64,000 nt of DNA from Macrostomum lignano (GCA_002269645.1 NIVC01002072.1:1-64000); one strand, 5' to 3'; counted from the stretch's first letter, positions 1 through 35,569 are shown. Notes: generated from the letters alone by a model not told the origin. Numbers and translations: made by a program.

Positions 1-527
1 TCTTAAGGAAATGGGGCCCGGCGCGCACCCTAGGGGAGAATTTGTACAGGTGCCGTAAGTCCGTTTACGGTCGGCATTTGGGTTCCCTAGCATGGCCGCA
101 AAATGAAGGTCAAGTCTCTCTGAATAGCCAATTTTTCCCTGTCAGGATGTGCCATAGACAACTGGTAGTGGTAGCCGCAGTTTGAGTCAGTGTGCTTTGC
201 CGAGTGAAGCCGTTAGGACTGCCTAAATGGAATTATGTGGAGCCACCCGTTTTTCAATTTGTTTTCTTCGACGCCGCAAGTATGTGGGTTTTGTCTGTGT
301 TTGTGTGTGTGTGAGTGTGTTTGTGTGTTTCGGATCAACTTTTCGGTCTTTACCTGTAGTTGCCCCGGTTTTCTTTTCTTTTCCTTCCCGGTAGTGGGTA
401 CTCCCCAGCTATCCGGCATTCACATGTCACGGCGCGTGGAGATAGGGTCGTAGAAGCTGTGTGCGCAGACGCCCTGGTCAACCACCCTCGGCCGCTGACA
501 CCCAGCAGTTGCCGCCCCGCAGCCGCA

Positions 528-1863
528 ATGGCCGCAGCCGCTGGTAACCAGGTCCCTCAGCCTCCAGAAGCAGTAGTAGTTGAGGAACCAGATGAAGGAG
601 TAGCAGCTCCCGCTCCCAATCAGGGTGGCGCAGCAGCCGCCGCTGCTCCCCCGGACGCAGCCCAGAATCCTCCTCAGGCAGTCCCGCAGCTAGGAGACTT
701 AGTTGCCGCTATAGCCAATGCGTTTAACCAGCTAAACATGGGCCAAGACGCCCAGAGGCCGAAAATCTACGTAGAAAAGTTCTCTCCCGGCGAACACTGT
801 TTTGTGCAATGGGTAGAGAGAATGATCTACAAGCTGGACGCGGAGAGAACTGTAGGAGATCAGGCTAGGAAGCAGGTGCTCATCTCGCACCTCCCAGGTG
901 AATTTCAGAACTTAGCCTTAGGATTGGACGGGCAATTGCCCTTTGAGCAGTTCGTATCTAGATTAGGAGAGCAGTTGGGCGAGGCCAACACTGATCTGGC
1001 TAAGAGAAATAAGCTGAAGAATCTGAGCCAGAAACCCGGCCAATCACATAGTGCTTTTGCTGCTATGATAAGATCTCAGATAACGGCCATGTTTCCTCAG
1101 ATTCAGGGTGAGCAGAGAGAACAAGAAATCGTGTACACCTACTTGGAACACGCTAAGCTCCCCCGCCAGGTCAGACAAGATCTGTTGAGCCGTCGCTGGC
1201 AGACAATTGAGCAGGTGTTAGAACAGCAGCAAGCCCTGTTAGAAGCCGCAGACTTAGCCGGGAAATGGGACAGTAGTGGCCCGCCCAGGTCTGAGTCCCG
1301 CACCGAAGTCCGTCTGCAACCTCAGCAGCCACCCAGGCCCCCTCGCAAGTGGGTCAGGATGGTGAACCAGGAAGCTGACGAGACGGAGGAGGACGGTGAC
1401 GGCCTATCAGAGATGCAAGAGAGGTTGGGCGCGCTAGAGCAAACGCAAAAGGATCTGCGCAACCAGCTGGTGCAGCTCAATGAAACTATGAAGGCGACAG
1501 CAGAGTCTGTTGCCCAGCTGCCCCAGCAGATGAGGCCCCCTCGCCCCGCCACTCCCAACAGGAACTGGAGGCAGGGCAGGGCGGCTCTAATAGCAGTAGG
1601 AACTGGCGCCAACCCCAGCCCCCGCGCTTGCAATTCAGGAGGCGCCCACGCCGCCGGCGCCGGGTGTGCAGCAGCAGCAATTGCAGCTTCGTGCGCCACC
1701 TGATCGCCATAGGCAAGATTTAGAGGAGTGGGGCAGAGATATGTTAGACGAGGCTACCAGGGAGAGGCAGGAGAGGCTCGCCCAGCTGCGCGCGCAAGCT
1801 CTGATGCCTCCTCCTTCCACGCCTGAAGAGCCCCCGGGTTCGGGAAACCCGTGGGAGGGCTGA
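528..1863 (+). CDS. gag: Gag (retrotransposon capsid-like), with two apparent single-base frameshifts
   Basis: ATG at 528 (MAAAAGNQ...), helical capsid-like core (KFSPGEHCFVQWVERMIY...LKNLSQKPGQSHSAFAAMIRSQ) and a coiled-coil stretch. Adding one base in the G run 1574-1576 and one in the C run 1619-1623 joins it to ...QQLQLRAPP...PGSGNPWEG* (stop 1861-1863). No CCHC knuckle seen. Confidence 0.75.
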
Positions 1864-1904
1864 ATGGCCCGGCCCGAACTCAGCCCCGTTCCCTCTCTAG
1901 GGCC
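1842..1904 (+). promoter_or_regulatory. -1 programmed ribosomal frameshift signal (G GGA AAC plus predicted pseudoknot)
   Basis: X XXY YYZ heptamer at 1842-1848 in the repaired gag frame. Stem GGGCTGA 1857-1863 / TCAGCCC 1880-1886; loop GGCCC can pair with GGGCC 1900-1904. The -1 frame is open towards the protease. Confidence 0.7.
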
Positions 1905-2365
1905 CAGCTTAACCTGCCACGTCCGCCCAGCAAGAAGTTTAGATTTGAGAAGGTACCCGATTTCTATCAGCCAAGACCAGCTGAGGACAACGCGGGAGAG
2001 ATATTGTTGTAGAGTTGCCAATTGAGAATGTTCCCACCCGCCTCCTGGTAGATGGGGGCAGTGCGCTGTCTTTGCTAACAGTCAAAGACTTTACTAAAAT
2101 TACCGGACAGAGTGTGGAGGCCCTGGAGCCCCCATGTGTGAAGGCCGTGTCCTACACGGGCAATGAATTAGAGATGCTAGGCCAGGCCACCCTCACAGCA
2201 GTTATTGGGCTAGAAGAGGTGAGAATCCTCTTTCTGGTCGTTGGCAATTCAGCAGCAGTTTCCCTCCTGGGTAGTGCTTTTCTAGCCAGTACGCATGCTA
2301 TCATAGACTATCGAACAGAAAAGGTTTACTTGCTAGGTGTGAGTCTCCCATTCGACCCCCGCTGA
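1842..2365 (+). CDS. Retropepsin-like aspartic protease (second ORF, reached by -1 frameshift)
   Basis: IVVELPIENVPTRLLVDGGSALSLL (active-site DGG) and LLGSAFL (cf. ILGxDFL). Needs one extra G in 1994-1996 to join the -1 frame. Stop TGA 2363-2365 with another in-frame stop 5 codons later. Confidence 0.8.
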
Positions 2366-2952
2366 GTAACAGATCGGTAGCTAGCCAGTGATTGCTTAAT
2401 TCCCCCCCCCCGATTCGCGTGTCGAAATTTTGCTCGTGTTGCCCCGTTGGAGACCGCTTTTCGCGTATTTACGTATGCCCTCTATTACTCGAATTTATGT
2501 TGTGACCTCGTGCTCGTTGGTGTTGTTTAAATATCTAAGATTTTAGCTCGAAAATTAGGCCCGTACAGTATGCGTTAATTCCCTATCAGTAAATATTAAC
2601 TTGGAAACTAGTAAAATTTCTATGGGTCTGCTCCACAGGAGGTCCTGCCCCGCTGTTTAAGATTTTCTGGGAACAATGGAAGTCTGGGACCGTAGGAAAT
2701 TAGCACCTTTAGGTCTGATTTCGTGTGTTTGTTCACACTTTGTGAAAGTCCGATTTTGGGAAACTTTTAATTGGTTTCGATGAGGCAATAGGGGGGGCAT
2801 TCAATGTAATTAAGTTTATCAGGCAAATGGGGCAGCAATTAGTTTAGAGTAGGCCAGTGGTTTAGTCAATGTAAAGTCAGGTAAGTAATTAAAGTCAAGT
2901 TATGGGGACAGATAGTTCAGAATTAGTAAGTAAGCATTAAGAACCACCAGCA

Positions 2953-3213
2953 TCAGCAGTTGGGAAGCCGCAGAAATAGCTCCAAGAGCAGTAGCCAGTG
3001 CATTGTGAGACCGGCTATTAGGGCCGTCGACAGCACGACCAAATGCCAGGAGCCGTCGGTCTCCACCACAGGGGTTGGCAAGGGCTGTGGAGCGGCAGCC
3101 ACGGGCGTCACCGCGGCGACCGGCGGCGGAGCGTGCGCTCGGGCTGACAACGGCGGTGGTACCGGATGCCAACCCGGCCGGACGCTGGTTCGCTGGCGGC
3201 CCGGCGGTCGCAT
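2953..3213 (-). CDS. Putative small Pro-rich single-pass membrane protein (86 aa), antisense within the LTR element
   Basis: ORF MRPPGRQ...SWHLVVLSTALIAGLTMHWLLLLELFLRLPNC. Its ATG (context gggccATG) is the first after a strong minus-strand acceptor (ttctcattttcAG, AG at 3360-3359). Confidence 0.35.
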   Translation of the reverse strand: MRPPGRQRTSVRPGWHPVPPPLSARAHAPPPVAAVTPVAAAPQPLPTPVVETDGSWHLVVLSTALIAGLTMHWLLLLELFLRLPNC

Positions 3214-3548
3214 GGCCCGGGAGCCGCGGCGCCTATGCCACCAGATGGCGCAGCCGGCCCAGAATCAGAGGGGGCGTCCGGCTCTGAATGGCTGTCTTCG
3301 GGCGCTTCGTAGTCGGACTCCTCTTCAAGGATGGGCTCGGCTACTAGCGGCCGGAATCCTGAAAATGAGAATTTAAGGGATGAAATAGAAGTAGGGAACT
3401 AGCCGGGTATTAGGATGTAGATAGATGGGGATTTTAACTTTATGGCGTGTGGTAGTGGCCTTCCTGGGGGTTTCTTCCTTTCTTCATTCCCTCTCCTTCC
3501 TTGAGCTCTAGGTGATCAAGTAGTGGTAGCCTTCTTCCCCGCCTTCTT

Positions 3549-3917
3549 TTAATGATACACCTCTAAGGATGGCAGTTTTTCGTCTTCCTCTCCTCTGGTA
3601 GAAGGGCAATTGTGGCAGTTTTCCCTAGCAACCTCTCTCAAAATTGTGGCTGATCCTCCTTTTCTTTTCTTTGGTAATGCGCCAAGATGGTGGTAGGTTC
3701 CCCTTTCTCTTTTATAATAGTACATCAAACTGGTGGCAGTCAAATTAATGATTAATTCCTCTTTCGAATTCTTTCGGCTGTTAAGTTTATGAGGGTCTCG
3801 GAGGCATGGATGAGAACTGCGTGCGCGCGTGGCGTTGAAGGAAGAAATCGAAGGGAGTTGGGCCGCATCATCATTTATCCTCCGGAGTCTAATCTCCCAA
3901 ATCCCTCTTCTATTCAT
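3549..3917 (-). CDS. Putative antisense basic ORF (122 aa from ATG 3917; open from ATG 3959) within the LTR element
   Basis: MNRRGIWEIRLRRINDD...; preceded by a possible acceptor cacacattcAG (3947-3946). No family recognised. Confidence 0.3.
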   Translation of the reverse strand: MNRRGIWEIRLRRINDDAAQLPSISSFNATRARSSHPCLRDPHKLNSRKNSKEELIINLTATSLMYYYKRERGTYHHLGALPKKRKGGSATILREVARENCHNCPSTRGEEDEKLPSLEVYH

Positions 3918-4074
3918 ATTAACCAAATTAATTTGTGTGCCTGATCTGAATGTGTGCATGTGAGGTGGGAGTGCGATCTCTGTCGGCTGGAGTACGGATC
4001 TGCCGCGGGCGCGACCGGAGGGTGGTCTCGGTCTGCCCCCTGCTCACAGGTGAGGAAACAGGAAGCGGCGGAAC

Positions 4075-4197
4075 CAGCCAATCAGAGCGCACGGAGACTA
4101 GAGCGAGCGGTCCCAAGCCAACGGCGACCCCGGCCGCAGCAGGTGTGCCTCCCAATGTGCTCAACCAATGGGAAGCCAGCCCCGGCACTATAAGAAG
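4075..4197 (+). promoter_or_regulatory. Putative internal Pol II promoter (CCAAT x3 plus TATA)
   Basis: CAGCCAATCAGAG 4075-4087, CCAAT at 4152 and 4165, TATAAGAAG 4189-4197, about 90 nt before ATG 4288. Confidence 0.45.
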
Positions 4198-4287
4198 ACC
4201 CACGCCTGCCAGAGCTGGAAATCATCAATCAGAGAAATCATTCTGTCCTTCAATCGCTGAAGCATTCTATGAACTATCCAGCTTGAC

Positions 4288-5635
4288 ATGGACACGAAGC
4301 CTACCATCAATCGAATTCAGCTATGCTCCAGCTTACCGTCTGAGCGTCCTGCCAGCCCAGTTAGCCGAAAGCGGCCCGTGACGCCATCCAAGAGGCGGAG
4401 GACGGCCCCGAGCCGCCAGCGGCGGCCTCCGCCAGGGTCGAAGAAGGTGACGAGACAATCGACCCGGCCAATGCTGGGGCGACACCGCGGACATTTCGGA
4501 CATGGCGGCCGAATTCGGCGAGGCGGCCCGCCGCCTGCGTGATGTTCTGCCCAACAGCCGCCGAAGTGTGGACATCGCCCTGCAAAGAGAAGAAGTCGAT
4601 TGGGGTCAGGTGGCTGGCGAACCTTCGGCGACAGCTATGGATCTGGTGCACTGGGTCGGGCCTGAGTCCTATCATGGCCCACTCCAGGCCGAGGACAGGC
4701 ATGCGACTCTAGAGCGCCAACTTCGCGACAACCTGGACCGGCCCTGTCTGCTCATCCTGTCAAAAGCGGCCCTGCTGGGATTGGTTGACAATACGCTGTT
4801 AATGTACATCGAGGCAGCGGCCCAGAGCGCCTACAAATACGCCCTCGGCGACCTAGTCCGGCAGGCCGCCAAGTTCCTCCGCAAGGTTGTGGATGAGGAA
4901 CCATCACACCTGACAGCCCGGCCGCCGTCCTGTGCCCCCATCACAGCAATCTTCAGCACCTGCGATCGGCCGGTCTACAAGAAGGTGATCATCAGCTGCG
5001 CAGCCTCCTCTCAGATGACTAGACAACTGACGCCAACCCAGAGAGCCCGGCTATTGATTGGCCTGGCCAGCTTGGCCAGCCGCTGGGGCATGCTTCCTGC
5101 GGACCTGCCAGGGCTGCTCTGGGGCTTCCTGAGCGAGGGCGCCGAATGGGAAGAGGCTCTCGTCATCCACGACGGCATTCTTGCGGCCTCCGCGCCGGCC
5201 TCTGCGCCCCTCCTCTATGCGCCGTTTGCCACAGTGGCCTGGGCCGCCACTCTCTCGCAACGGTTCAATCGCCGCTGTGGGTGGGTGTTGGCGGCCCTGG
5301 GCGACGTTGAGCCCGGCTACGCGGGCCTGGCCGAGGTGCCCCGTGGCACTTTGCAGCATTTTGCAATCGCGCAGCCGCCCCTGTCTGCACCAACTCTGAC
5401 ACGGCTGCAACAAGTACGGAATGCGGCCTTCGTCGTCCAATGCCAAGCCCTGGGCATCCCGACTCTGCCGCAGTTGAGGGGCGTGCTGCGCAACGACATC
5501 TTGCCTAGCCGATGGCACCGAGTGGTGCTCACGGCCGCGGCAGCCCAACGTTATGTGGAAGCATGGGCAAGTGCCATGGCTCAGGTGGCGGCATATGGCC
5601 CGTACCAGCTAAATCAAGAGGCCCATTTCGAGTAA
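4288..5635 (+). CDS. Unknown accessory protein ORF-X (377 aa uninterrupted from 4502; ~449 aa if two single-base gaps are repaired)
   Basis: Long GC-rich ORF 4502-5635. Adding one C in 4406-4409 and one G in 4476-4479 links it to ATG 4288 with a basic NLS-like motif (RKRPVTPSKRRRT). No domain recognised. Confidence 0.6.
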
Positions 5636-5977
5636 GGATGCTGACTGCCTGCTGAGCGACGTCCGCCGGCCGGTCCGACCCGCCTTTCCGCCCCCTTGCG
5701 TTGTGTGTTTGTCGTGTGTGTGTGTGTGAAATTATCCTATTAATATTCGGTTCTTCCATAATATTCATTTTTAAACTTTAATAACCAATATACGAGTCAT
5801 TGTTGTGTCATTATTCTAAAAATTCCTAAAAATGGCTCTGTGTTGGCTGCTCACTACTTTTACCGTAAGAAAGGCCATATATTATTACTGCAATTGGCTC
5901 AGTTTAAAACGAAAGGCATGGCGAGTGGGTAGATTTCGTTTAACGTATAGGCGAAAGGAAATCAGGTTGGTGATGGG

Positions 5978-6159
5978 ACTTACCGAGTAGTTGTATAGTT
6001 TGGAAAATCGCGCTGAGTGCCTTGGTTGGAAACTGCGACTCCGTGTAGGTTGCAGGCAGCCGGCTCCCGTTATCAGTGGCGCCTTTTATACAGTGGCCAG
6101 CGCACGGCGCGGCGCCTCCCAGCCTACAACCGATCGCCCCGAAGCCCTCTGACTGGCTG
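5978..6159 (-). promoter_or_regulatory. Putative antisense promoter, short leader exon and splice donor
   Basis: Minus strand: CAGCCAGTCAGAG (6159-6147), TATAAAAGG (6090-6082), then an ATG-free leader ending ctcg|GTAAGT (donor 5983-5978). Confidence 0.45.
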
Positions 6160-6678
6160 AAGCGGGGTCCGAGCCTTCAAGGACGCTAGGCCTCCGTGCG
6201 GTTGAACTCCCGGCGAAATTAGCTTATTAATTTACTGCGCTGCATTAGTATTTTTCCCCTGTGTAATCGTCATTCTCCCCGAGGCTCTGCCCTTGGCTGT
6301 GTGCTAGCAACCCTTCCCCCCTTCTTTTTCCCCACTTCCCTCACCCTTCCCCGTTTCCTCTCTTTCCCAGCTGCGCTTCTATCCAATTATGATAATTTAT
6401 TGTTGACAATTCGCTATTTTTCTCCCTACTATTGCGCTGTCTGTGTTTCCCCCCTCCCACTTTAGCCACAGCAACAGTTGAAATTTTTGAAATTCTGTAT
6501 TGCACTCCAACCTATGTATCTCGTGTTGTGAATTTATTGCTATCCCCTCTATTTTATCGCCTTTTTCCATTCCCGCTCGCGGTTTGTTAATTCTGTGATT
6601 TCACGTTCGGTTGAGATCCCGCTCCCGTCTGTGTGGTTCCATGTTGGGCAGTGATGATGACGGAACCAGTTCCGTCAC

Positions 6679-6695
6679 AAAAGGCAGTGGGGGTG
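6679..6695 (+). other. Polypurine tract
   Basis: AAAAGGCAGTGGGGGTG immediately 5' of the LTR start TGATG. Confidence 0.7.
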
Positions 6696-8913
6696 TGATG
6701 TAACCACGCTCTGGTCGCGGGATAGGGCATGGGAACTTTTTCGAAAGTGCCTCCTATCCCGTGCACCCTCTGCACAGAGCTGTCGAGACTCGGCCAGGTC
6801 TCCGACCGGGCCTGGAGACTCCCGCTCTGCTGCACCTCTCCTGCTGCCTTGGTCCCGTCTCTTCTGCCGCCACACCTGCCTTTCCGGAGCCCCTACCCCT
6901 TTCTGTACCTCCCCCTCTACCCTATCTCTTCTGTTCCCGCCCTATTCTTCCTGTACTTTCTCTACCTCCTCCTTTTTTTTGTCTCCCTCTGCACTCTTTT
7001 CCTGCGCTGTCCCCTCTTTCCCTGTGTCTACTTACAGTACTTTGTGTGCTCACCGTCTCCCCATCCCCTCTCAAACTCCCAAACGGTGACGCAAGTCGTG
7101 TGACCCCTTCTCCCCTCGGTGACTCATCGATGACTCATCCCCCTCTCTTGCGCAACCTTTTCTCACGCTATTGTTCTCCTTCCCAAATTTCTCATGTGAC
7201 ACCCACCCCACCTCCGCTTCTATTGTTCTCGTTTTTGCTTCTTTTGTTCTCTCGACCCCCACCAATTATCACATTTTCTCCGATTTTCTCTTTCTTTTGT
7301 TCTCGTTTTCGCACCTAATTATCACCTTTTCTCCAATGTTTACTTTTCCATTGTTCTCAGTTTTCCCCAATTATCCCCGATTTCCAATTCCTTTGTTCTC
7401 GACCCCAGCCCTATTGTTCTCAATGTTTGCTTGCGCAACACTTTCGCGACCACCCGCTGCGCCAATTATCCCCCACCCCACCTCCGGATTGCGCAATTTC
7501 CCGATTTCTCATGTTGCTATGCCGGTCTCATGCTTCTCATCATGACTCATTCTGACGTCATTCTGCCGGCAGCCAATCAGAGAGAGGGAGCCATGGTAAC
7601 GACCTTGAGGAGGCGGCTGTGAGGTCTATAAAAGGAAGCGATTTCGGCATGAGAATACTCAACTGAGTTTATCTCTGTTCCTCTCCTCGTCCTTCTTTGG
7701 ACTTGCTGTCAGATTGAGTTCTGACCCATTCGTCTATAAGACGAATCCCTGCCGGTCCGCGGTCTGTTACCGCCAAGTTATCCTTAGCTCCCCAAGTGAG
7801 CTCGCCTATCGGCCAGCGGTCTGATACCGCCCAGCATCATCAGCATCGCCTGATCTACATCAGCGCCTCGTCGCTCCAGCGCATCGCCGCTTCACCGTCT
7901 GCCTGACTGCAGCCTACAGCCGCCCTCGGTCACTCCGTCTCTCTCTCTCTCTCTGTGCAGCTGCCGGTAAGTTCCTGCTACTAATTTGTGCTCTAATTGC
8001 CTTTGCTTATCCGGGGTTTGCCTATTTTCCATTGTCTGATTAGAGAGCTGAGCCAATTGTGATACCGTATCTTTTGCTGTATTTTACTCAATAGTGAAGC
8101 TGCCTAATTGCCTGCTTATTTGCCTAAGGGCCTAATTATTAACTATTAACTAACTTCATCATTATTCAATCTTTCACCATCATTTCACTCATGGCTTGCT
8201 AAGCCTTTCTCCCGGGGTGGCAAAGCATAAGGAAGTTTGGGTAAGCTAATGGCCTCTCCCCGTGCAAAGCCCGCCTGTGAGTGCGTGATGCGGGGCCGCG
8301 TGTGCGTGCAGTAGAGGGATTAGCGAGTCTTGGCACAGAATGGCAGTAGGAAGGTTGCAACCCCATGCTAACGCGTCCCTTCGCCCTGAGCAATCTAAAC
8401 TGTAGACAGTACATGTTCGCCTCATACTACTCTTAGTAATCAAAGTCGCAAGTCAGCCTCGCTCACAGCCACAAAGGATCCCCTGCTGAGAAATCCTCCA
8501 GGATTGAGCCCAGAGTTCCCGATCATGCCCCAAGCAGAGTCCCTGTACTCGGCTGCATGCGTCTCCCCTGTTAGCCTAAATCCCCTGGTAACCAATCCAG
8601 GCGGGGCTCTAGCCTCGAGAGGTCTGGTAGAAAGATCCAGGTGCGCCAGGTCACATAGAGTGGTGGCAGCCACTCGGTCATACCATGACCGAGTGACCAA
8701 CTATTGCACCTTGGCTACAGGTGGGGTCCATGTGGGTCCTTGGCCCTCTGGTCACGAAGCGCTACCAAAGCTACTAATCATGTGGGCGGGACAGTCTGGT
8801 GCTGGAGGTCCGTCAGGTCATTGCCCGGTCATAGGCAGCCTACGGTCATTGCCCCCTCTAGCCATGCGTTCGTCTCTCTACGGAGCGGACAGGCGACAAG
8901 GGCGGTTACATCA
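6696..8913 (+). repeat. 3' LTR (~2.2 kb)
   Basis: TG...CA ends with a 10-bp terminal inverted repeat TGATGTAACC/GGTTACATCA. Contains AP-1-like TGACTCA sites, CRE TGACGTCA, CAGCCAATCAGAG 7570-7582 and TATAAAAGG 7627-7635. The second LTR is not in the window, so it cannot be confirmed by pairing. Confidence 0.7.
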
Positions 8914-9302
8914 CTTTTATAAATAGTGCTCCCCCGGATAAATTTGACCCGGACATATTGGGTACAGTTTTTTTTCATTTAAAACCATGCCGCAGAGGAT
9001 AACGGTATCGTACCAAATGACTCAGGACATGACACAAGCTGGAATGCAACCTGGAATGCAACTGGCCTGAGGCTTCGGACATGTATATACTGCTCATAGC
9101 AACTTTCTATCACCGGAGTATCTATACGAGTATAGTAACTTTTCAAACTGACATTGCGCAGCACTAACGAGAGGCTAGTGTACATTGCCGACTAATGATA
9201 GTGACCTGAGGACAGCACCCCCTGAACACAGTGCTGATGACAGAGTGCACCCTGAGGACATTCAAACAGGAACTGCAGTTCACAAAAAGCACAACACCCT
9301 CA

Positions 9303-9653
<351 letters not shown>

Positions 9654-9775: not shown

Positions 9776-9865
9776 CCGGTGATAGCTCAGTTGGTAAAGC
9801 GGAGGACTGTAGAGTGCAAATGTGCAGTGATCCTTAGGTCGGTGGTTCAAATCCGCCTCACCGGA
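9776..9865 (+). tRNA. tRNA-Tyr(GTA) with 17-nt intron (9813-9829)
   Basis: Acceptor stem CCGGTGA/TCACCGG, A73, D arm TAGCTCAGTTGGTAAAGC, anticodon GTA 9809-9811, T arm GGTGG-TTCAAAT-CCGCC, TTTT terminator 9871-9874. Confidence 0.92.
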
Positions 9866-11753: not shown

Positions 11754-14458
<2,705 letters not shown>

Positions 14459-14910
14459 GATCAAACAAGGACACAGCCCTGCGGCAGAATTTCAATGTAA
14501 AGGTTGGGTCCTATTAGAAAATCGTGCAGTTAGCCCTGGCCGGAACAAATGGCGGCGGTGTTTACGCAAAGCAGATAAACAAAGTCAATATTGGCCTGCT
14601 TGCTGCTCCCACGGTTCAACTTGTTTGTCGCGCAGCGAGGGACACACGGGCTGAGGCGGCAGCTTTGCCCGGCCTTTCCGCCGCTTTTTTGGCTGCCAGA
14701 TCGAGAGTTGAAATCCAGAGTTTTCGTTGGAATAAATACACTGGGTGCCCTCCCGCACCCGGCTGAACTGCACCGGGACCGGCACAAATCCCGGCTGAGC
14801 CGCATGGGAAAATGAAATTCGACACTGGGGGTTTCATGGGAGCAAGTGGTGGGCTCGGCGCTTTGGTGTCTGCTGTGTGTGGCTTTGAATGTGAAATTTG
14901 TAGCCTTATT

Positions 14911-15497
<587 letters not shown>

Positions 15498-18120: not shown

Positions 18121-21100
18121 GAGACAGGGGTGGGCGCCCACCAAGAGACAGGTGTGATCACCAAGAGACAGGTGTGATCACCAAGAGACAGGGGCGCCCA
18201 CCAAGAGACAGGTGTGATCACCAAGAGACAGATGTGATCACCAAGAGACAGGTGTGCTCACCAAGAGACAGGTGTGATCACCAAGAGACAGGTGTGATCA
18301 CCAAGAGACAGGGGCGCCCACCAAGAGACAGATGTGATCACAAAGAGACAGTTGTGATCACCAAGAGACAGGGGCGCCCACCAAGAGACAGGTGTGATCA
18401 CCAAGAGACAGGTGTGATCACCAAGAGACAGGGGCGCCCACCAAGAGACAGGTGTGATCACCAAGAGACAGATGTGATCACCAAGAGACAGGGGCGCCCA
18501 CCAAGAGACAGGTGTGATCACCAAGAGACAGATGTGATCACCAAGAGACAGATGTGATCACCAAGAGACAGGTGTGATCACCAAGAGACAGATGTGATCA
18601 CCAAGAGACAGATGTGATCACCAAGAGACAGGTGTGATCACCAAGAGACAGATGTGATCACCAAGAGACAGGTGTGATCACCAAGAGACAGATGTGATCA
18701 CCAAGAGACAGGTGTGATCACCAAGAGACAGATGTGATCACCAAGAGACAGATGTGATCACCAAGAGACAGGTGTGATCACCAAGAGACAGATGTGATCA
18801 CCAAGAGACAGATGTGATCACCAAGAGACAGGTGTGATCACCAAGAGACAGGGGGCGCCCACCAAGAGACAGATGTGATCACCAAGAGACAGATGTGATC
18901 ATTACCAAGAGACAGATGTGATCACCAAGAGACAGGGGGCGCCCACCAAGAGACAGATGTGATCACCAAGAGACAGATGTGATCACCAAGAGACAGGTGT
19001 GATCACCAAGAGACAGGGGGCGCCCACCAAGAGACAGATGTGATCACCAAGAGACAGATGTGATCACCAAGAGACAGATGTGATCACCAAGAGACAGATG
19101 TGATCACCAAGAGACAGGTGTGATCACCAAGAGACAGGGGGCGACCACAAAGAGACAGGGGGCGCCCACCAAGAGACAGATGTGATCACCAAGAGACAGA
19201 TGTGATCACCAAGAGACAGGTGTGATCACCAAGAGACAGGGGGCGCCCACCAAGAGACAGATGTGATCACCAAGAGACAGATGTGATCACCAAGAGACAG
19301 ATGTGATCACCAAGAGACAGGTGTGATCACCAAGAGACAGGGGGCGACCACAAAGAGACAGGGGGCCACCACCAAGAGACAGGGGGCGACCACCAAGAGA
19401 CAGGGGCGCCCACCAAGAGACATATGAGATCACCAAGAGACAGGGGGCGATCACCAAGAGACAGGTGTGATCACCAAGAGACAGGGGGCGACCACCAAGA
19501 GACAGGGGGCGACCACAAAGAGACAGGGGGCCACCAAGAGACAGGGGCGCCCACCAAGAGACAGGTGTGATCACCAAGAGACAGATGTGATCACCAAGAG
19601 ACAGGTGTGATCACCAAGAGACAGGTGTGATCACCAAGAGACAGATGTGATCACCAAGAGACAGGTGTGATCACCAAGAGACAGATGTGATCACCAAGAG
19701 ACAGGTGTGATCACCAAGAGACAGATGTGATCACCAAGAGACAGGTGTGATCACCAAGAGACAGGTGTGATCACCAAGAGACAGATGTGATCACCAAGAG
19801 ACAGGGGCGCCCACCAAGAGACAGATGTGATCCCCAAGAGACAGGGGGCGCCCACCAAGAGACAGATGTGATCACCAAGAGACAGATGTGATCACCAAGA
19901 GACAGGTGTGATCACCAAGAGACAGGGGGCGCCCACCAAGAGACAGATGTGATCACCAAGAGACAGATGTGATCACCAAGAGACAGATGTGATCACCAAG
20001 AGACAGATGTGATCACCAAGAGACAGGTGTGATCACCAAGAGACAGGGGGCGACCACAAAGAGACAGGGGGCGCCCACCAAGAGACAGATGTGATCACCA
20101 AGAGACAGATGTGATCACCAAGAGACAGGTGTGATCACCAAGAGACAGGGGGCGCCCACCAAGAGACAGATGTGATCACCAAGAGACAGATGTGATCACC
20201 AAGAGACAGATGTGATCACCAAGAGACAGGTGTGATCACCAAGAGACAGGGGGCGACCACAAAGAGACAGGGGGCCACCACCAAGAGACAGGGGGCGACC
20301 ACCAAGAGACAGGGGCGCCCACCAAGAGACATATGAGATCACCAAGAGACAGGGGGCGATCACCAAGAGACAGGTGTGATCACCAAGAGACAGGGGGCGA
20401 CCACCAAGAGACAGGGGGCGACCACAAAGAGACAGGGGCCACCAAGAGACAGGGGCGCCCACCAAGAGACAGGTGTGATCACCAAGAGACAGATGTGATC
20501 ACCAAGAGACAGGTGTGATCACCAAGAGACAGGTGTGATCACCAAGAGACAGATGTGATCACCAAGAGACAGGTGTGATCACCAAGAGACAGGTGTGATC
20601 ACCAAGAGACAGATGTGATCACCAAGAGACAGGGGCGCCCACCAAGAGACAGATGTGATCCCCAAGAGACAGGGGGCGCCCACCAAGAGACAGATGTGAT
20701 CACCAAGAGACAGATGTGATCACCAAGAGACAGGTGTGATCACCAAGAGACAGGGGGCGCCCACCAAGAGACAGATGTGATCACCAAGAGACAGATGTGA
20801 TCACCAAGAGACAGATGTGATCACCAAGAGACAGATGTGATCACCAAGAGACAGGTGTGATCACCAAGAGACAGGGGGCGACCACAAAGAGACAGGGGCG
20901 CCCACCAAGAGACAGATGTGATCAACAAGAGACAGATGTGATCACCAAGAGACAGGTGTGATCACCAAGAGACAGGGGGCGCCCACCAAGAGACAGATGT
21001 GATCACCAAGAGACAGATGTGATCACCAAGAGACAGATGTGATCACCAAGAGACAGGTGTGATCACCAAGAGACAGGGGGCGACCACAAAGAGACAGGGG

Positions 21101-24100
21101 GCCACCACCAAGAGACAGGGGGCGACCACCAAGAGACAGGGGCGCCCACCAAGAGACATATGAGATCACCAAGAGACAGGGGGCGATCACCAAGAGACAG
21201 GTGTGATCACCAAGAGACAGGGGGCGACCACCAAGAGACAGGGGGCGACCACAAAGAGACAGGGGGCCACCAAGAGACAGGGGCGCCCACCAAGAGACAG
21301 GTGTGATCACCAAGAGACAGATGTGATCACCAAGAGACAGGTGTGATCACCAAGAGACAGGTGTGATCACCAAGAGACAGATGTGATCACCAAGAGACAG
21401 GTGTGATCACCAAGAGACAGATGTGATCACCAAGAGACAGGTGTGATCACCAAGAGACAGATGTGATCACCAAGAGACAGGTGTGATCACCAAGAGACAG
21501 GTGTGATCACCAAGAGACAGATGTGATCACCAAGAGACAGGGGCGCCCACCAAGAGACAGATGTGATCCCCAAGAGACAGGTGTGATCACCAAGAGACAG
21601 GGGCGCCCACCAAGAGACAGGTGTGATCACCAAGAGACAGATGTGATCACCAAGAGACAGGTGTGCTCACCAAGAGACAGGTGTGATCACCAAGAGACAG
21701 GTGTGATCACCAAGAGACAGGGGCGCCCACCAAGAGACAGATGTGATCACAAAGAGACAGTTGTGATCACCAAGAGACAGGGGCGCCCACCAAGAGACAG
21801 GTGTGATCACCAAGAGACAGGTGTGATCACCAAGAGACAGGGGCGCCCACCAAGAGACAGGTGTGATCACCAAGAGACAGATGTGATCACCAAGAGACAG
21901 ATGTGATCACCAAGAGACAGGTGTGATCACCAAGAGACAGATGTGATCACCAAGAGACAGATGTGATCACCAAGAGACAGGTGTGATCACCAAGAGACAG
22001 ATGTGATCACCAAGAGACAGGTGTGATCACCAAGAGACAGATGTGATCACCAAGAGACAGGTGTGATCACCAAGAGACAGATGTGATCACCAAGAGACAG
22101 ATGTGATCACCAAGAGACAGGTGTGATCACCAAGAGGCAGATGTGATCACCAAGAGACAGATGTGATCACCAAGAGACAGGTGTGATCACCAAGAGACAG
22201 GGGCGCCCACCAAGAGACAGATGTGATCACCAAGAGACAGATGTGATCACCAAGAGACAGATGTGATCACCAAGAGACAGATGTGATCACCAAGAGACAG
22301 GTGTGATCACCAAGAGACAGGGGGCGCCCACCAAGAGACAGATGTGATCACCAAGAGACAGATGTGATCACCAAGAGACAGATGTGATCACCAAGAGACA
22401 GATGTGATCACCAAGAGACAGGTGTGATCACCAAGAGACAGGGGGCGACCACAAAGAGACAGGGGGCGCCCACCAAGAGACAGATGTGATCACCAAGAGA
22501 CAGATGTGATCACCAAGAGACAGGTGTGATCATCAAGAGACAGGGGGCGCCCACCAAGAGACAGATGTGATCACCAAGAGACAGATGTGATCACCAAGAG
22601 ACAGATGTGATCACCAAGAGACAGGTGTGATCACCAAGAGACAGGGGGCGACCACAAAGAGACAGGGGGCCACCACCAAGAGACAGGGGGCGACCACCAA
22701 GAGACAGGGGCGCCCACCAAGAGACAGATGTGATCACCAAGAGACAGGGGGCGATCACCAAGAGACAGGTGTGATCACCAAGAGACAGGGGGCGACCACC
22801 AAGAGACAGGGGCGACCACAAAGAGACAGGGGCCACCAAGAGACAGGGGCGCCCACCAAGAGACAGGTGTGATCACCAAGAGACAGATGTGATCACCAAG
22901 AGACAGGTGTGATCACCAAGAGACAGGTGTGATCACCAAGAGACAGATGTGATCACCAAGAGACAGGGGCGCCCACCAAGAGACAGATGTGATCACCAAG
23001 AGACAGGTGTGATCACCAAGAGACAGGGGCGCCCACCAAGAGACAGGTGTGATCACCAAGAGACAGGTGTGATCACCAAGAGACAGGGGCGCCCACCAAG
23101 AGACAGGTGTGATCACCAAGAGACAGATGTGATCACCAAGAGACAGGTGTGATCACCAAGAGACAGGTGTGATCACCAAGAGACAGATGTGATCACCAAG
23201 AGACAGGGGCGCCCACCAAGAGACAGATGTGATCACCAAGAGACAGGTGTGATCACCAAGAGACAGGGGCGCCCACCAAGAGACAGGTGTGATCACCAAG
23301 AGACAGATGTGATCACCAAGAGACAGGTGTGATCACCAAGAGACAGATGTGATCACCAAGAGACAGGTGTGATCACCAAGAGACAGATGTGATCACCAAG
23401 AGACAGGTGTGATCACCAAGAGACAGATGTGATCACCAAGAGACAGATGTGATCACCAAGAGACAGGTGTGATCACCAAGAGACAGATGTGATCACCAAG
23501 AGACAGATGTGATCACCAAGAGACAGGTGTGATCACCAAGAGACAGGGGCGCCCACCAAGAGACAGATGTGATCACCAAGAGACAGATGTGATCACCAAG
23601 AGACAGATGTGATCACCAAGAGACAGATGTGATCACCAAGAGACAGGTGTGATCACCAAGAGACAGGGGCGCCCACCAAGAGACAGATGTGATCACCAAG
23701 AGACAGATGTGATCACCAAGAGACAGATGTGATCACCAAGAGACAGATGTGATCACCAAGAGACAGGTGTGATCACCAAGAGACAGGGGGCGACCACAAA
23801 GAGACAGGGGGCGCCCACCAAGAGACAGATGTGATCACCAAGAGACAGATGTGATCACCAAGAGACAGGTGTGATCACCAAGAGACAGGGGGCGCCCACC
23901 AAGAGACAGATGTGATCACCAAGAGACAGATGTGATCACCAAGAGACAGATGTGATCACCAAGAGACAGGTGTGATCACCAAGAGACAGGGGGCGACCAC
24001 AAAGAGACAGGGGGCCACCACCAAAAGACAGGGGGCGACCACCAAGAGACAGGGGCGCCCACCAAGAGACAGATGTGATCACCAAGAGACAGGGGGCGAT

Positions 24101-25970
24101 CACCAAGAGACAGGTGTGATCACCAAGAGACAGGGGGCGACCACCAAGAGACAGGGGGCGACCACAAAGAGACAGGGGGCCACCAAGAGACAGGGGCGCC
24201 CACCAAGAGACAGGTGTGATCACCAAGAGACAGATGTGATCACCAAGAGACAGGTGTGATCACCAAGAGACAGGTGTGATCACCAAGAGACAGATGTGAT
24301 CACCAAGAGACAGGGGCGCCCACCAAGAGACATATGTGATCACCAAGAGACAGGTGTGATCACCAAGAGACAGGGGCGCCCACCAAGAGACAGGTGTGAT
24401 CACCAAGAGACAGATGTGATCACCAAGAGACAGGTGTGATCACCAAGAGACAGGTGTGATCACCAAGAGACAGATGTGATCACCAAGAGACAGGGGCGCC
24501 CACCAAGAGACAGATGTGATCACCAAGAGACAGGTGTGATCACCAAGAGACAGGGGCGCCCACCAAGAGACAGGTGTGATCACCAAGAGACAGGTGTGAT
24601 CACCAAGAGACAGGGGCGCCCACCAAGAGACAGGTGTGATCACCAAGAGACAGGTGTGATCACCAAGAGACAGGGGCGCCCACCAAGAGACAGGTGTGAT
24701 CACCAAGAGACAGGGGCGCCCACCAAGAGACAGGGGCGCCCACCAAGAGACAGGTGTGATCACCAAGAGACAGATGTGATCACCAAGAGACAGATGTGAT
24801 CACCAAGAGACAGGTGTGATCACCAAGAGACAGATGTGATCACCAAGAGACAGGTGTGATCACCAAGAGACAGATGTGATCACCAAGAGACAGGTGTGAT
24901 CACCAAGAGACAGATGTGATCACCAAGAGACAGATGTGATCACCAAGAGACAGGTGTGATCACCAAGAGACAGGGGGCGCCCACCAAGAGACAGATGTGA
25001 TCACCAAGAGACAGATGTGATCACCAAGAGACAGATGTGATCACCAAGAGACAGATGTGATCACCAAGAGACAGGTGTGATCACCAAGAGACAGGGGGCG
25101 CCCACCAAGAGACAGATGTGATCACCAAGAGACAGATGTGATCACCAAGAGACAGATGTGATCACCAAGAGACAGATGTGATCACCAAGAGACAGATGTG
25201 ATCACCAAGAGACAGATGTGATCACCAAGAGACAGGGGGCGCCCACCAAGAGACAGATGTGATCACCAAGAGACAGATGTGATCACCAAGAGACAGGTGT
25301 GATCACCAAGAGACAGATGTGATCACCAAGAGACAGGTGTGATCACCAAGAGACAGATGTGATCACCAAGAGACAGATGTGATCACCAAGAGACAGGTGT
25401 GATCACCAAGAGACAGGGGGCGACCACAAAGAGACAGGGGGCCACCACCAAGAGACAGGGGCGATCACCAAGAGACAGGGGCGATCACCAAGAGACAGGG
25501 GCGATCACCAAGAGACATGGGCGACCACCAAGAGACAGGGGCGACCACCTAGAGACATGGGCGATCACCAAGAGACAGGGGCGATCACCAAGAGACAGGG
25601 GCACTCACCAAGAGACAGGGGGCGACCACCAAGAGACAGGGGCGATCACCAAGAGACAGGGGCGATCACCAAGAGACAGGGGGCGACCACCAAGAGACAG
25701 GGGCGACCACCAAGAGACAGGGGGCGACCACCAAGAGACAGATGTGATCACCAAGAGACGGACGATCACCAAGAGACAGGGGCGATTACCAAGAGACAGG
25801 GGCGATCACCAAGAGACATGGGCGACCACCAAGAGACAGGGGCGATCACCAAGAGACAGGGGCGATCACCAAGAGACAGGGGCGATCACCAAGAGACATG
25901 GGCGACCACCAAGAGACAGGGGCGACCACCTAGAGACAGGGGCGATCACCAAGAGACAGGGGCGCCCAAC
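18121..25970. repeat. 7.9-kb 20-bp minisatellite (CACCAAGAGACAG plus 7-nt variable segment) with higher-order blocks
   Basis: Variants GTGTGAT / ATGTGAT / GGGCGCC / GGGCGAC / GGGCGAT; repeated multi-unit cassettes. Confidence 0.97.
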
Positions 25971-34000: not shown

Positions 34001-35374
34001 ATAAATATCAGGGTAAGGATATAAGTGTCATAATATCGCTATACGTGTCAGGGTATGGATATAAGTGTCAGGATATGGATATAAGTGTCAGAGTATGAAT
34101 ATAAGTGTCAGGGTATGGATGTAAGTGTCAGGGTATGGATATAGGTGTCAGGGTATGGATATAAATATCAGGTAAGGATATAAGTGTCATAATATCGCTA
34201 TACGTGTCAGGGTATGGATATAAGTGTCAGGATATGGATATAAGTGTCAGAGTATGAATATAAGTGTCAGGGTATGGATGTAAGTGTCAGGGTATGGATA
34301 TTAGTGTCAGGGTATGGATATTAGTGTCAGGGCATTGATGTAAGTATCAGGGTTCAGATATAAGTGTCAAGGTATTGATGCAAGTGTTAGGGTATAGATA
34401 TAAGTGTCAGGGCATTGATGTAAGTATCAGGGTTCAGATATAAGTGTCAAGGTATTGATGCAAGTGTTAGGGTATAGATATAAGTGTCAGGGTATTGATG
34501 TAAGTATCAGGGTTCAGATATAAGTGTCAAGGTATTGATGCAAGTGTTAGGGTATAGATATAAGTGTCAGGGCATTGATGTAAGTGTCAGGGTTCAGACA
34601 GAATGGAATGCAATGAAAATCAGATGAAGCAGCAGCATGCACTAACCGATACATATTGTGATCATTCTCAGGCAGCAAGTCCACATCGTGAAATATGTAA
34701 CAGTAGGCCGGGAATATCTTGGCCGACTCAACGAATCCAATATTGAACAGCAGGCCGCGGTTGAATCGCGTGGTGCCCGCCTGTTCGACGACAAATATTC
34801 GATAGTCGAGCTGTTGCCTGCGCAGCAGCGGATGCAGACTCGACATCAGCAGTCTCAGGTGCGGATCCCGATTCCTATACGGCACAATAATGGCAACTCG
34901 TTGCCTAGCAACGCAGTGTTCCGGCTGGCAACCGCCGTGCCTGATGTAGGACAGGGTAGACTGCAGTTCGGCCCAGGTAGGAGCCAAACTCGGGTCAGAT
35001 TTCACGGGGATTTTATTCCCCAACAGGCCGGGCGGGTCCTCGGGACACGCAGGCAAATTGGATTTGGCCAGCCGGCTGGCTAGAGAGGCCGGGTCCGCCA
35101 GCTCGGAGGCTGTCGTATTCGTTGGCCTAGTTGGCCTTGCCGCCGCTGTTGTCGCCATGGCAACTGGCACTGCATCGGCTTTGTACTTGGTCCATGTGAC
35201 TGGGCCCAGCATAGATTGAGATGAACTAAACCAATTATGCAGCAGCCACAGGCCCATGAGGGCCATCAGTGCCAGGCAGACAGACCGAATGACTCTCTTT
35301 GATGCAAGGCAATTCAGCCAGTTCACGCTGACAGCGCCTGAGGCGCTGGAGCCACTGCTGGAACTTGGCGTCGC
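31015..35374 (-). CDS. B4GALT: Beta-1,4-galactosyltransferase/GalNAc-transferase family (GT7); exons 35374-34647, 33125-32844, 31228-31015 (or spliced at 31084)
   Basis: Type II TM anchor; VAIIVPYRNR, FNRGLLFNIGF, YIFHDVDLLP, YFGGACAL, NGFPNIYFGWGAEDDD, EDGLNS motifs. Phase-2 junctions match. No in-frame ATG before the TM segment in the large exon. Confidence 0.93.
31480..32805. repeat. GGATCT(G/A)-based 6/7-bp composite satellite in B4GALT intron
   Basis: ggatctg/ggatcta units. Confidence 0.95.
33474..34596. repeat. 20-bp minisatellite (cagggtatggatataagtgt) in B4GALT intron
   Basis: Direct reading. Confidence 0.95.
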
Positions 35375-35569
35375 CTGCACAGTTGGGTAAGTGGGGCGAA
35401 TACCAACTGTTAATGAAATGCTATTTTGCACTAGACGAATCTAGTTCTCTTTAAACTGTCTTATCCAAAAAATAAGTTTGAAAATGAACTAATGCATAGG
35501 ATTCTTGCAGAGTAAGCAATTAAGTCCTATCTCTGAAATTATTATCAAGCTATCAAGTACTAACCAACT

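What the first reader, a model, noticed from the sequence alone, without database searches (positions are those of the whole stretch)
1..8913. Pol-less, complex LTR element: gag-pro plus multiple unknown sense and antisense units
Seen: Gag, frameshift signal, protease, PPT and LTR look intact, but the ~4.3 kb where RT-RNaseH-IN normally lie holds an unknown ~450-aa ORF, antisense ORFs and two extra promoter-like modules, with no pol remnants I could find. Known: non-autonomous gag-only elements (plant TR-GAG) and complex retroviruses with accessory or antisense genes (HTLV HBZ, foamy internal promoter) exist. Inference: this may be an undescribed satellite-like element that makes its own processed capsids, borrows RT/IN in trans and carries regulatory cargo.
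Basis: partly seen in the sequence, partly recalled or inferred. Interest (0 to 1): 0.8.

Follow-up and report, generated by a model that had tools for sequence, protein, structure and literature searches.

The report
Decayed gag-protease retrotransposon remnant without pol
The window opens with a real but broken remnant of a Ty3/gypsy-type retrotransposon that keeps its capsid gene and protease and has no reverse transcriptase or integrase. The 6.5 kb after it (one orphan gene, three promoter-like modules, a possible LTR) cannot be shown here to belong to the same element.

Summary
The gag ORF is a genuine retroelement capsid gene: its only relatives lie upstream of PR-RT-RNaseH-IN genes, and its predicted fold matches PNMA2, Arc, Copia and Ty3 capsids. 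The slippery heptamer GGGAAAC is the one its relatives use at their gag/pol overlap. The protease ORF aligns to their proteases.

This copy is degenerate. The capsid ORF, slip site and protease domain are out of register (two indel-type disruptions). No CCHC zinc knuckle survives in any frame. The protease catalytic triad is non-canonical.

Pol is absent from the region and from the whole 64-kb window.

Between protease and putative LTR, only the 377-codon sense ORF has a coding signature, and it has no detectable homologue. The antisense ORFs look like by-products of GC-rich sequence. Three CCAAT-TATA modules are present, against 0.05 expected by chance.

The proposed 3' LTR rests on a 10-nt terminal inverted repeat plus a purine tract. 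That signature appears in about 7% of shuffled sequences. No 5' LTR or PBS lies in the window.

Copy number, target-site duplications and an autonomous partner could not be tested, because the host genome is not in any collection I could search. Gag/protease-only derivatives, added ORFs and antisense promoters are all already known. Interest is modest.

The parts
1..527 (+). Sequence upstream of gag (leader-like). It contains no LTR end and no recognisable primer-binding site, and has two strong splice-acceptor-like pyrimidine tracts.
   Evidence: No similarity to 6696-8913 or to any other part of the window. Read directly.
528..1862 (+). gag of a Ty3/gypsy-type retroelement, given as one broken gene. 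The capsid (CA) domain lies at about 690-1268 and a coiled coil at about 1404-1514. Breaks: one frame disruption between the capsid domain and the slip site. The nucleocapsid CCHC knuckle is absent in every frame.
   Evidence: phmmer against 1.84 billion proteins gave 4 hits, best E 9.6e-8. The hits carry PNMA/Retrotrans_gag and zf-CCHC domains. The AF2 core has pLDDT 70-88. The top Foldseek PDB hits are PNMA2, Arc, Copia, MLV, dArc1, HIV and Ty3 capsids. The ORF exceeds all 1000 shuffles, and no CCHC motif was found. The coding signature continues in another frame up to the slip site.
1842..1848 (+). Slippery heptamer GGGAAAC, the ancestral -1 frameshift site between gag and pro.
   Evidence: It is the only XXXYYYZ heptamer in 1500-2400. 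The same heptamer sits in the gag frame just before the gag stop in relatives L001 and L002, with pol open in the -1 frame; L005 has AAAAAAC. The downstream fold is not better than shuffles.
1845..2365 (+). pro (retropepsin-like protease), given as one broken gene, with the domain at about 2021-2311. Breaks: one frame disruption between slip site and domain, and a catalytic triad that departs from the D-S/T-G consensus. Nothing pol-like follows.
   Evidence: Pfam gag-asp_proteas E 0.013, below the curated cut-off. BLASTP to the protease of L001 gave E 1e-4 and to L005 E 1e-5. No D[TS]G[AS] motif occurs in any frame of 1-9300.
2366..4060 (.). Non-coding stretch where RT would be expected. It alternates AT-rich and GC-rich blocks and holds ORFs of 86-164 codons on both strands, none with coding periodicity.
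   Evidence: Six-frame Pfam scans found nothing. The coding-signature table and ORF-length shuffles give no support for these ORFs.
4078..4195 (+). Promoter-like module M1: a CCAATCAG box, a second CCAAT box and TATAAGAAG.
   Evidence: Four further ATGs lie between the expected start site and the ORF's ATG.
4502..5635 (+). Orphan 377-codon ORF, a genuine or recently genuine coding sequence. It is Ala/Leu-rich, predicted all-helical, and has no signal peptide or envelope-like features.
   Evidence: It exceeds all 1000 shuffles. GC by codon position is 0.69/0.50/0.71, beyond 500 longest-ORF shuffles. No match in Pfam, the 5.8-billion protein search, PDB, or metagenome and viral contigs. AF2 pLDDT is 37. 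No relation to Gag by hhalign.
6082..6162 (-). Promoter-like module M2 on the opposite strand (CCAGTCAGAG ... TATAAAAGG). A GTAAGT donor-like site follows about 75 nt after the expected start.
6679..6693 (+). Purine-rich tract, a candidate polypurine tract (PPT).
   Evidence: Read directly.
6696..8913 (+). Putative 3' LTR, unproven. It has TG...CA ends and a 10-nt perfect terminal inverted repeat (14 of 16 when extended). Its upstream half is CT-rich with short dispersed and tandem repeats at 7147-7514. Module M3 lies at 7553-7635 (CRE-like TGACGTCA, CCAATCAG, TATAAAAGG). A GTAAGT site lies at 7967.
   Evidence: the signature occurs in 6.7% of shuffles. (modules; no sense-strand AATAAA or ATTAAA)..
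9303..9635 (-). Neighbour: first coding exon of a heparan-sulfate-3-O-sulfotransferase-like gene, with a GT donor at its 3' end. The whole finding region therefore lies antisense in its intron.
   Evidence: Sulfotransfer_1 N-terminus E 0.016. It has the strongest coding signature in the region. Sequence read.

Best explanation
Positions 528-2365 are the degenerate 5' part of a Ty3/gypsy-type (Metaviridae-like) LTR retrotransposon. It comprises a capsid-encoding gag, the ancestral -1 frameshift heptamer and a retropepsin domain. It is inserted antisense in the first intron of an HS3ST-like host gene.

Shown: the copy has lost RT, RNase H and integrase entirely, has lost the nucleocapsid zinc knuckle, and carries two frame disruptions and a non-canonical protease triad.

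Inferred: it is a dead deletion derivative. At most it can express a capsid-domain protein. It cannot express a protease through the slip site.

The next 6.5 kb holds one real orphan protein-coding ORF behind a CCAAT/TATA module. It also holds two further promoter-like modules that point away from each other, each followed by a splice-donor-like site. I read these as separate RNA polymerase II transcription units. They were either joined to the remnant when pol was deleted or replaced, or they are simply neighbouring intronic sequence. I do not read them as accessory genes of a working 'complex' element. The LTR call at 6696-8913 is plausible but unproven.
For: - Gag homology and fold.
- Relatives lie next to PR-RT(-RH-IN) genes.
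- Slip site shared with relatives.
- Protease alignment.
- Out-of-register parts, no CCHC, no canonical triad.
- No pol: six-frame Pfam, and tblastn with relatives' pol. Those pol sequences find each other at E 7e-78 but find nothing in the 64 kb.
- Only gag, pro and the 377-codon ORF have a coding signature.
- Modules exceed chance: 3 observed against 0.05 expected. They are not paralogous to each other.
- CpG observed/expected is about 0.59 in gag-pro and 0.8-1.0 in the ORF and the modules, which suggests different histories or chromatin states.
- The LTR signature is reached by 6.7% of shuffles. It has no sense-strand poly(A) signal. No 5' LTR or PBS lies in 1-527.
Against: - A purine tract directly followed by a TG...CA segment with a 10-nt terminal inverted repeat, downstream of gag-pro, is where a 3' LTR should be. 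If it is real, all of 1-8913 is one element and the orphan ORF is its cargo.
- The sense strand carries only one AATAAA/ATTAAA hexamer in 9.7 kb against six on the other strand. That fits a unit transcribed end to end, though the difference is not significant.
- The gag capsid ORF is uninterrupted while its neighbours are broken. This could reflect selection on Gag, but it is not significant (about P = 0.09 by my rough Poisson estimate).
- The frame disruptions could be assembly indel errors.
- Copy number was not testable, so a family of identical architecture cannot be excluded.
Confidence: 0.5

Rival explanations
1. All of 1-8913 (plus a 5' LTR upstream of the window) is one member of a non-autonomous, gag/protease-retaining LTR retrotransposon family. 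Pol has been replaced by cargo: an orphan gene with its own promoter and an antisense promoter. Copies depend on RT and integrase supplied by an autonomous relative. This copy would simply be an aged one.
For: - PPT-like tract plus TG...CA terminal inverted repeat in the expected place.
- U3-like short repeats and a CRE/CCAAT/TATA promoter inside the segment.
- Pol is cleanly absent rather than fragmented.
- The orphan ORF is truly coding and lies in the sense orientation.
- Gag/protease-only families, additional ORFs with their own promoters and antisense promoters are all known in LTR elements (PMC13570524, PMC7264820, PMC5408684).
Against: - The LTR signature arises by chance in about 7% of shuffles.
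- No 5' LTR or PBS lies in the 527 nt before gag.
- There is no canonical poly(A) signal in the putative LTR.
- The CT-rich composition runs across the proposed internal/LTR border.
- There is no second copy in the 64 kb.
- No related Gag above 29% identity and no homologue of the ORF exists in any searchable collection.
- This copy's gag, slip site and protease are out of register.
Confidence: 0.22
2. The gag ORF is a domesticated capsid gene of the Arc/PNMA/RTL kind, nested in the HS3ST-like intron. The capsid domain is kept by selection, while the zinc knuckle, protease and pol decayed or were deleted. The orphan ORF and the promoter modules are unrelated nested host genes.
For: - The capsid ORF is open for 391-447 codons with a confident capsid-fold core, while everything downstream is broken or lost.
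- Two strong splice-acceptor-like sites lie upstream of the ATG, as for a gene with a 5'-UTR intron.
- The window holds a single copy.
Against: - No orthologue was found anywhere. The four detectable relatives are ordinary transposon Gags at 23-29% identity.
- The intact-versus-broken contrast is not statistically significant.
- No promoter is visible in the 527 nt available.
- The C-terminal tail of the open frame is out of the ancestral frame.
Confidence: 0.12
3. The juxtaposition is an assembly artefact: a chimeric join or collapsed repeat in a very repeat-rich genome. In that case neither the absence of pol nor the frame disruptions reflect the real locus.
For: - The window is saturated with micro- and minisatellites, which are hard to assemble.
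- A C10 homopolymer lies immediately after the protease ORF.
- Indel-type frame breaks are the typical error of long-read assemblies.
Against: No tool result points to a join. Composition changes are gradual. The host exon, tRNA and neighbouring genes are coherent.
Confidence: 0.06

Closest known systems
Ty3/gypsy-type (Metaviridae) LTR retrotransposons, represented here by contigs L001/L002 (Logan) and L005 (JGI metagenome)
   Same: The Gag capsid domain is homologous (23-29% identity). The same GGGAAAC -1 slip site sits at the end of gag. A retropepsin domain follows directly.
   Different: The relatives have one or two CCHC knuckles, a D-S-G protease and RT-RNaseH-integrase. The window has none of these, and its gag-pro parts are out of register.
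TR-GAG and GAG/PROT-only non-autonomous LTR retrotransposons of plants (Coffea, Arabidopsis; 28 such families in sugar beet, PMC13570524)
   Same: Gag, here with protease as well, is retained while RT, RNase H and integrase are absent. If the LTR is real, the architecture is the same kind.
   Different: Those are defined as multi-copy families with two LTRs, and sometimes an identifiable autonomous partner. None of that could be tested here. The host is an animal. The internal region is much longer and holds an unrelated coding ORF.
LTR retrotransposons with additional ORFs or transduced genes: maize Grande gene23 with its own promoter, Retand, RIRE2, Bs1 (PMC7264820); bdelloid rotifer ORF3s (PMC5408684)
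   Same: An extra ORF without database homologues lies between the gag-pol region and the 3' LTR. It has an upstream promoter of its own and an antisense promoter nearby.
   Different: In those elements pol is present (Bs1 excepted), and the extra ORF is conserved across many copies. Here pol is gone, the only credible extra ORF is in the sense orientation, and conservation is unknown.
Domesticated gag genes (Arc/dArc1, PNMA2, MOAP1)
   Same: They share the capsid fold and are the top structural matches. They also show retention of the capsid with loss of pol.
   Different: Those genes are conserved, single-copy and expressed host genes. No orthologue, expression or selection data exist for this ORF.

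Membership tests
Ty3/gypsy-type LTR retrotransposon (Metaviridae-like) | Gag with a retroviral-type capsid (CA) domain | tested here: met
   phmmer E 9.6e-8 to proteins carrying PNMA/Retrotrans_gag. Foldseek top hits are PNMA2, Arc, Copia and Ty3 capsids.
Ty3/gypsy-type LTR retrotransposon (Metaviridae-like) | Nucleocapsid CCHC zinc knuckle | tested here: not met
   No C-x2-C-x3-5-H-x3-5-C motif in any of the six frames of 1-9300. Three of the four relatives have it: P0002 and P0004 by Pfam, and P0001 by reading its sequence.
Ty3/gypsy-type LTR retrotransposon (Metaviridae-like) | Programmed -1 frameshift site at the gag/pol junction | tested here: inconclusive
   The heptamer is present and shared with relatives. 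It is not in register with the capsid ORF or the protease domain. The downstream structure is no better than shuffles.
Ty3/gypsy-type LTR retrotransposon (Metaviridae-like) | Aspartic protease with a D-S/T-G catalytic triad | tested here: not met
   The domain aligns to relatives' proteases. No D[TS]G[AS] motif occurs in any frame. The Pfam score is below the cut-off.
Ty3/gypsy-type LTR retrotransposon (Metaviridae-like) | Reverse transcriptase, RNase H and integrase, in that order | tested here: not met
   Six-frame Pfam scans of 1690-6800 were empty. No YxDD motif. tblastn with L005 and L001 pol found nothing in the 64 kb at E <= 1, while the two find each other at E 7e-78.
Ty3/gypsy-type LTR retrotransposon (Metaviridae-like) | Two long terminal repeats, with a PBS after the 5' one and a PPT before the 3' one, flanked by a target-site duplication | tested here: inconclusive
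   There is a candidate PPT and a TG...CA segment at 6696-8913 (6.7% of shuffles show the same). There is no 5' LTR, PBS or target-site duplication in the window.
TR-GAG / GAG-PROT-only non-autonomous LTR retrotransposon | Gag coding capacity retained and pol enzymes absent | tested here: met
   The capsid ORF is open. Pol is absent.
TR-GAG / GAG-PROT-only non-autonomous LTR retrotransposon | Multiple dispersed copies with the same architecture, each with paired LTRs and its own target-site duplication | not testable with these tools
   The host genome is absent from every searchable collection. There is no second copy in the window.
TR-GAG / GAG-PROT-only non-autonomous LTR retrotransposon | An autonomous partner sharing LTR or leader sequence | not testable with these tools
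   The same limitation applies. The nearest Gag relatives are only 23-29% identical.
Complex retrovirus-like element with accessory or antisense genes | Additional ORFs with coding signature, in sense and antisense | tested here: inconclusive
   One sense ORF (4502-5635) is clearly coding. No antisense ORF shows coding periodicity apart from the mirror image of that ORF. Whether the ORF belongs to the element is unknown.
Complex retrovirus-like element with accessory or antisense genes | Envelope gene | tested here: not met
   No Pfam hit in any frame. The 377-aa ORF has no signal peptide and is predicted all-helical at low confidence.
Domesticated gag gene (Arc/PNMA-like) | Syntenic orthologues under purifying selection; expressed host gene | not testable with these tools
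   No orthologue or near relative was retrievable.

The most novel reading that the evidence does not exclude
1-8913, with a 5' LTR beyond the window, is one copy of an animal family of gag/protease-retaining, pol-less LTR elements. The family has swapped pol for an orphan protein gene driven by its own CCAAT/TATA promoter and faced by an antisense promoter. That would be a parasite of an autonomous Ty3/gypsy relative that also carries its own regulated cargo.
Probability: 0.15. Interest if true: 0.6.

Novelty: new member of a known kind. Interest (0 to 1): 0.3.

Why it matters
On the best-supported reading this is an ordinary decayed retrotransposon remnant in an intron, and it matters mainly for annotation. 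The gag ORF should not be called a host gene without further evidence. The antisense ORFs should not be called genes at all.

Two things are worth keeping:
- The Gag lineage is very isolated. Only four relatives at 23-29% identity turned up among 1.84 billion cluster representatives.
- The 377-codon ORF has a strong coding signature and no detectable relative, and it sits between convergent promoter-like modules.

If host-genome data later show the same architecture in many copies, it would be a clear animal counterpart of the plant gag/protease-only non-autonomous elements, with cargo as well.

Tried and rejected
- Close relatives or the host locus could not be reached. The three homologous-protein searches (gag, the 377-codon ORF, HS3ST exon 1) returned nothing. 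Exact-protein look-ups failed. Metagenome and viral contig scans failed.
- tblastn with the relatives' Gag does not even recover the window's gag, so it was used only for pol, where a positive control works.
It was redone with X marking stops.
- The AF2 model of the 377-aa ORF is too poor (pLDDT 37) for a fold search. PDB sequence hits are noise. It has no relation to Gag.
- PBS candidates were examined by eye. TGGTAGTGGTAGCC at 164 and similar motifs near 3450-3530 have no tRNA-like complement. The nearby tRNA-Tyr 3' end has no complement in 1-527 (by eye, using the tRNA-Tyr).
- The idea that the three promoter modules, or the leader and the LTR, are paralogous copies is rejected: sensitive blastn found nothing.
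- The idea that module M3 is the first exon of the PACS-like gene is judged unlikely from the gene order.
- RNA structure after the slip site is not significant.
- Rfam found nothing in the region.

Full report
SETTING. The window is animal nuclear DNA. It contains an HS3ST-like sulfotransferase first exon (9303-9635, minus strand) and a tRNA-Tyr(GTA) with a 17-nt intron (9776-9865). It also contains a beta-1,4-galactosyltransferase-like exon (34547-35431, minus) and PACS-like exons (41099-41512 and 52415-53602, plus). Micro- and minisatellites are extremely dense. The HS3ST-like exon ends in a GT donor at its low-coordinate end. The finding region 1-8913 therefore lies in that gene's intron, on the opposite strand.

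GAG IS REAL. The ORF from the first ATG at 528 (391 codons; 447 stop-free) is longer than in all 1000 dinucleotide shuffles and has coding-type GC periodicity. Pfam and the word-indexed search found nothing.

A full HMMER pass over 1.84 billion cluster representatives found four relatives (E 9.6e-8 to 1.7e-4, 23-29% identity). These carry PNMA/Retrotrans_gag capsid domains, and two also carry zf-CCHC. On their contigs they lie directly upstream of pol ORFs. L001 has protease and RT. L005 has RT, RNase H, integrase zinc-binding domain, integrase core and integrase C-terminal domain. That is the Ty3/gypsy order.

An AlphaFold model built on the four-sequence alignment has a confident core (pLDDT 70-88 over residues about 80-245). 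Its best PDB matches are all retroelement capsids: PNMA2, Arc, Copia, MLV, dArc1, HIV and Ty3.

SLIP SITE AND PROTEASE EXIST, BUT THE COPY IS BROKEN. One canonical slippery heptamer, GGGAAAC, lies at 1842-1848. L001 and L002 have the identical heptamer in the gag frame shortly before the gag stop, with pol open in the -1 frame; L005 has AAAAAAC. The heptamer is therefore the ancestral gag/pro frameshift site. The RNA downstream folds no better than shuffles.

The ORF ending at 2365 aligns to the proteases of L001 and L005 (E 1e-4 and 1e-5). Pfam gives E 0.013, below the cut-off.

As the sequence stands, the capsid ORF, the frame in which the heptamer works and the protease domain are not in register. 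Two indel-type disruptions are needed, one in gag and one in pro. No CCHC knuckle exists in any frame. No D-S/T-G-A/S motif exists in any frame, so the protease triad is non-canonical. 'Look intact' is therefore not confirmed. The caveat is that indel-type breaks can be assembly errors.

POL IS ABSENT. Six-frame translations of 1690-6800, with X marking stops, gave no Pfam match to RT, RNase H or integrase on either strand. No YxDD motif occurs in 1-9300. tblastn with the pol proteins of L005 and L001 finds nothing in the entire 64-kb window at E <= 1. The same two proteins find each other at 35% identity, E 7e-78, which serves as the positive control.

WHAT FILLS THE SPACE. I scored every stop-free stretch of at least 70 codons for codon-position GC and codon usage. 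Only gag, the gag tail, the protease, the 4451-5632 frame and the host exon look coding. All other sense and antisense ORFs in 2366-8913 do not. The 185-codon antisense frame over 5054-5608 is the expected mirror image of the sense ORF.

The 377-codon ORF (4502-5635) is convincing as coding sequence. It exceeds all 1000 shuffles in length, and its periodicity exceeds 500 longest-ORF shuffles. It has no relative in Pfam, the 5.8-billion protein set, PDB, or metagenome and viral contigs. It has no relation to Gag, and only a low-confidence all-helical model.

Three CCAAT-box to TATA-box modules are present:
- M1 at 4078-4195 (+), upstream of the ORF.
- M2 at 6162-6082 (-).
- M3 at 7553-7635 (+), with a CRE-like palindrome.

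Three are observed against 0.05 expected. The pattern was defined after I had seen them. They are not copies of one another. M2 and M3 are each followed by a GTAAGT donor-like site, about 75 and 310 nt after the expected start. Four upstream ATGs lie between M1's expected start and the ORF's ATG.

CpG observed/expected is about 0.59 in gag-pro and in the flank. It is 0.8-1.0 in the ORF and the modules.

THE LTR. 6696-8913 starts with TG, ends with CA and has a 10-nt perfect terminal inverted repeat (14 of 16 when extended). A 15-nt purine tract precedes it. It is the only such pair in 9.7 kb. However, 6.7% of block-shuffled sequences give one at this stringency, and 24% do at 9 nt.

The segment has short repeats upstream of M3, as U3 regions often do. 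It has no AATAAA or ATTAAA on the sense strand. The CT-rich composition continues across its proposed inner border. Nothing in 1-527 resembles its 3' end, no PBS is evident, and nothing else in the window resembles it. The LTR is plausible but unproven.

INTERPRETATION. The best-supported reading (confidence about 0.5) is a dead, pol-deleted Ty3/gypsy-type remnant. The unrelated transcription units next to it were either brought in by the deletion or replacement event or simply flank it.

Copy number, target-site duplications, the 5' LTR, orthologous loci and expression could not be examined. The host genome is not in any collection the tools reach.

COMPARISON WITH WHAT IS KNOWN. Each ingredient of the 'complex pol-less element' is already described:
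- Gag- or gag/protease-only non-autonomous LTR families: TR-GAG, and 28 GAG/PROT-only families in sugar beet (PMC13570524).
- Additional ORFs between pol and the 3' LTR, some with their own promoter, as well as antisense promoters and gene transduction by Bs1 (PMC7264820).
- ORF3 capture in rotifer elements (PMC5408684).

Even on the most generous reading this would be a new member or variant of a known kind, in an animal host.

No step of the analysis required repairing, joining or reconstructing any sequence. The breaks are counted, not located.

Noticed in passing
window 9776-9865 (+): tRNA-Tyr(GTA) gene with a 17-nt intron, about 140 bp upstream of the HS3ST-like first exon on the other strand. 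Rfam scores it at 55 bits. ARAGORN's default run missed it and found it only with introns allowed.
   Followed up: yes
window 11754-15497: A 2.7-kb (ATCT)n array, followed about 450 bp later by a 0.6-kb (GATA)n array. Together they form 97% complementary inverted arms several hundred nt long, a potential hairpin or cruciform and an assembly hazard.
   Followed up: partly
window 18139-25960: A 7.8-kb satellite of a 20-bp unit (about 389 copies, 88% matches) with strong A-over-T and G-over-C strand skew. More than 15 further minisatellite arrays (units of 14-49 bp) fill the introns of the PACS-like gene region.
   Followed up: partly
window 34547-35431 (-), 41099-41512 (+), 52415-53602 (+): Host genes: a beta-1,4-galactosyltransferase-like exon (Glyco_transf_7N, E 2e-43) and PACS-like exons (C2_PACS_N E 5e-19; Pacs-1 E 3e-33). 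The two genes are arranged head to head.
   Followed up: partly
window 5983 (-) and 7967 (+): Each of the two divergent promoter-like modules M2 and M3 is followed by a consensus GTAAGT donor. They look like first exons of spliced, possibly non-coding, transcripts about 1.5 kb apart across a CT-rich spacer.
   Followed up: partly
window 528-2365 versus 3961-7966: CpG observed/expected is about 0.59 in gag-pro, in 7967-8913 and in the flanking intron. It is 0.8-1.0 in the orphan ORF and all three promoter modules. This hints that the blocks have different methylation histories.
   Followed up: no
L001/L002 (Logan SRR31628425, SRR31628392) and L005 (JGI 3300040801): The only detectable Gag relatives come from three sequencing runs of one accession series and one metagenome. 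They share the GGGAAAC (or AAAAAAC) slip site. This Gag lineage seems very sparsely sampled in public data.
   Followed up: partly
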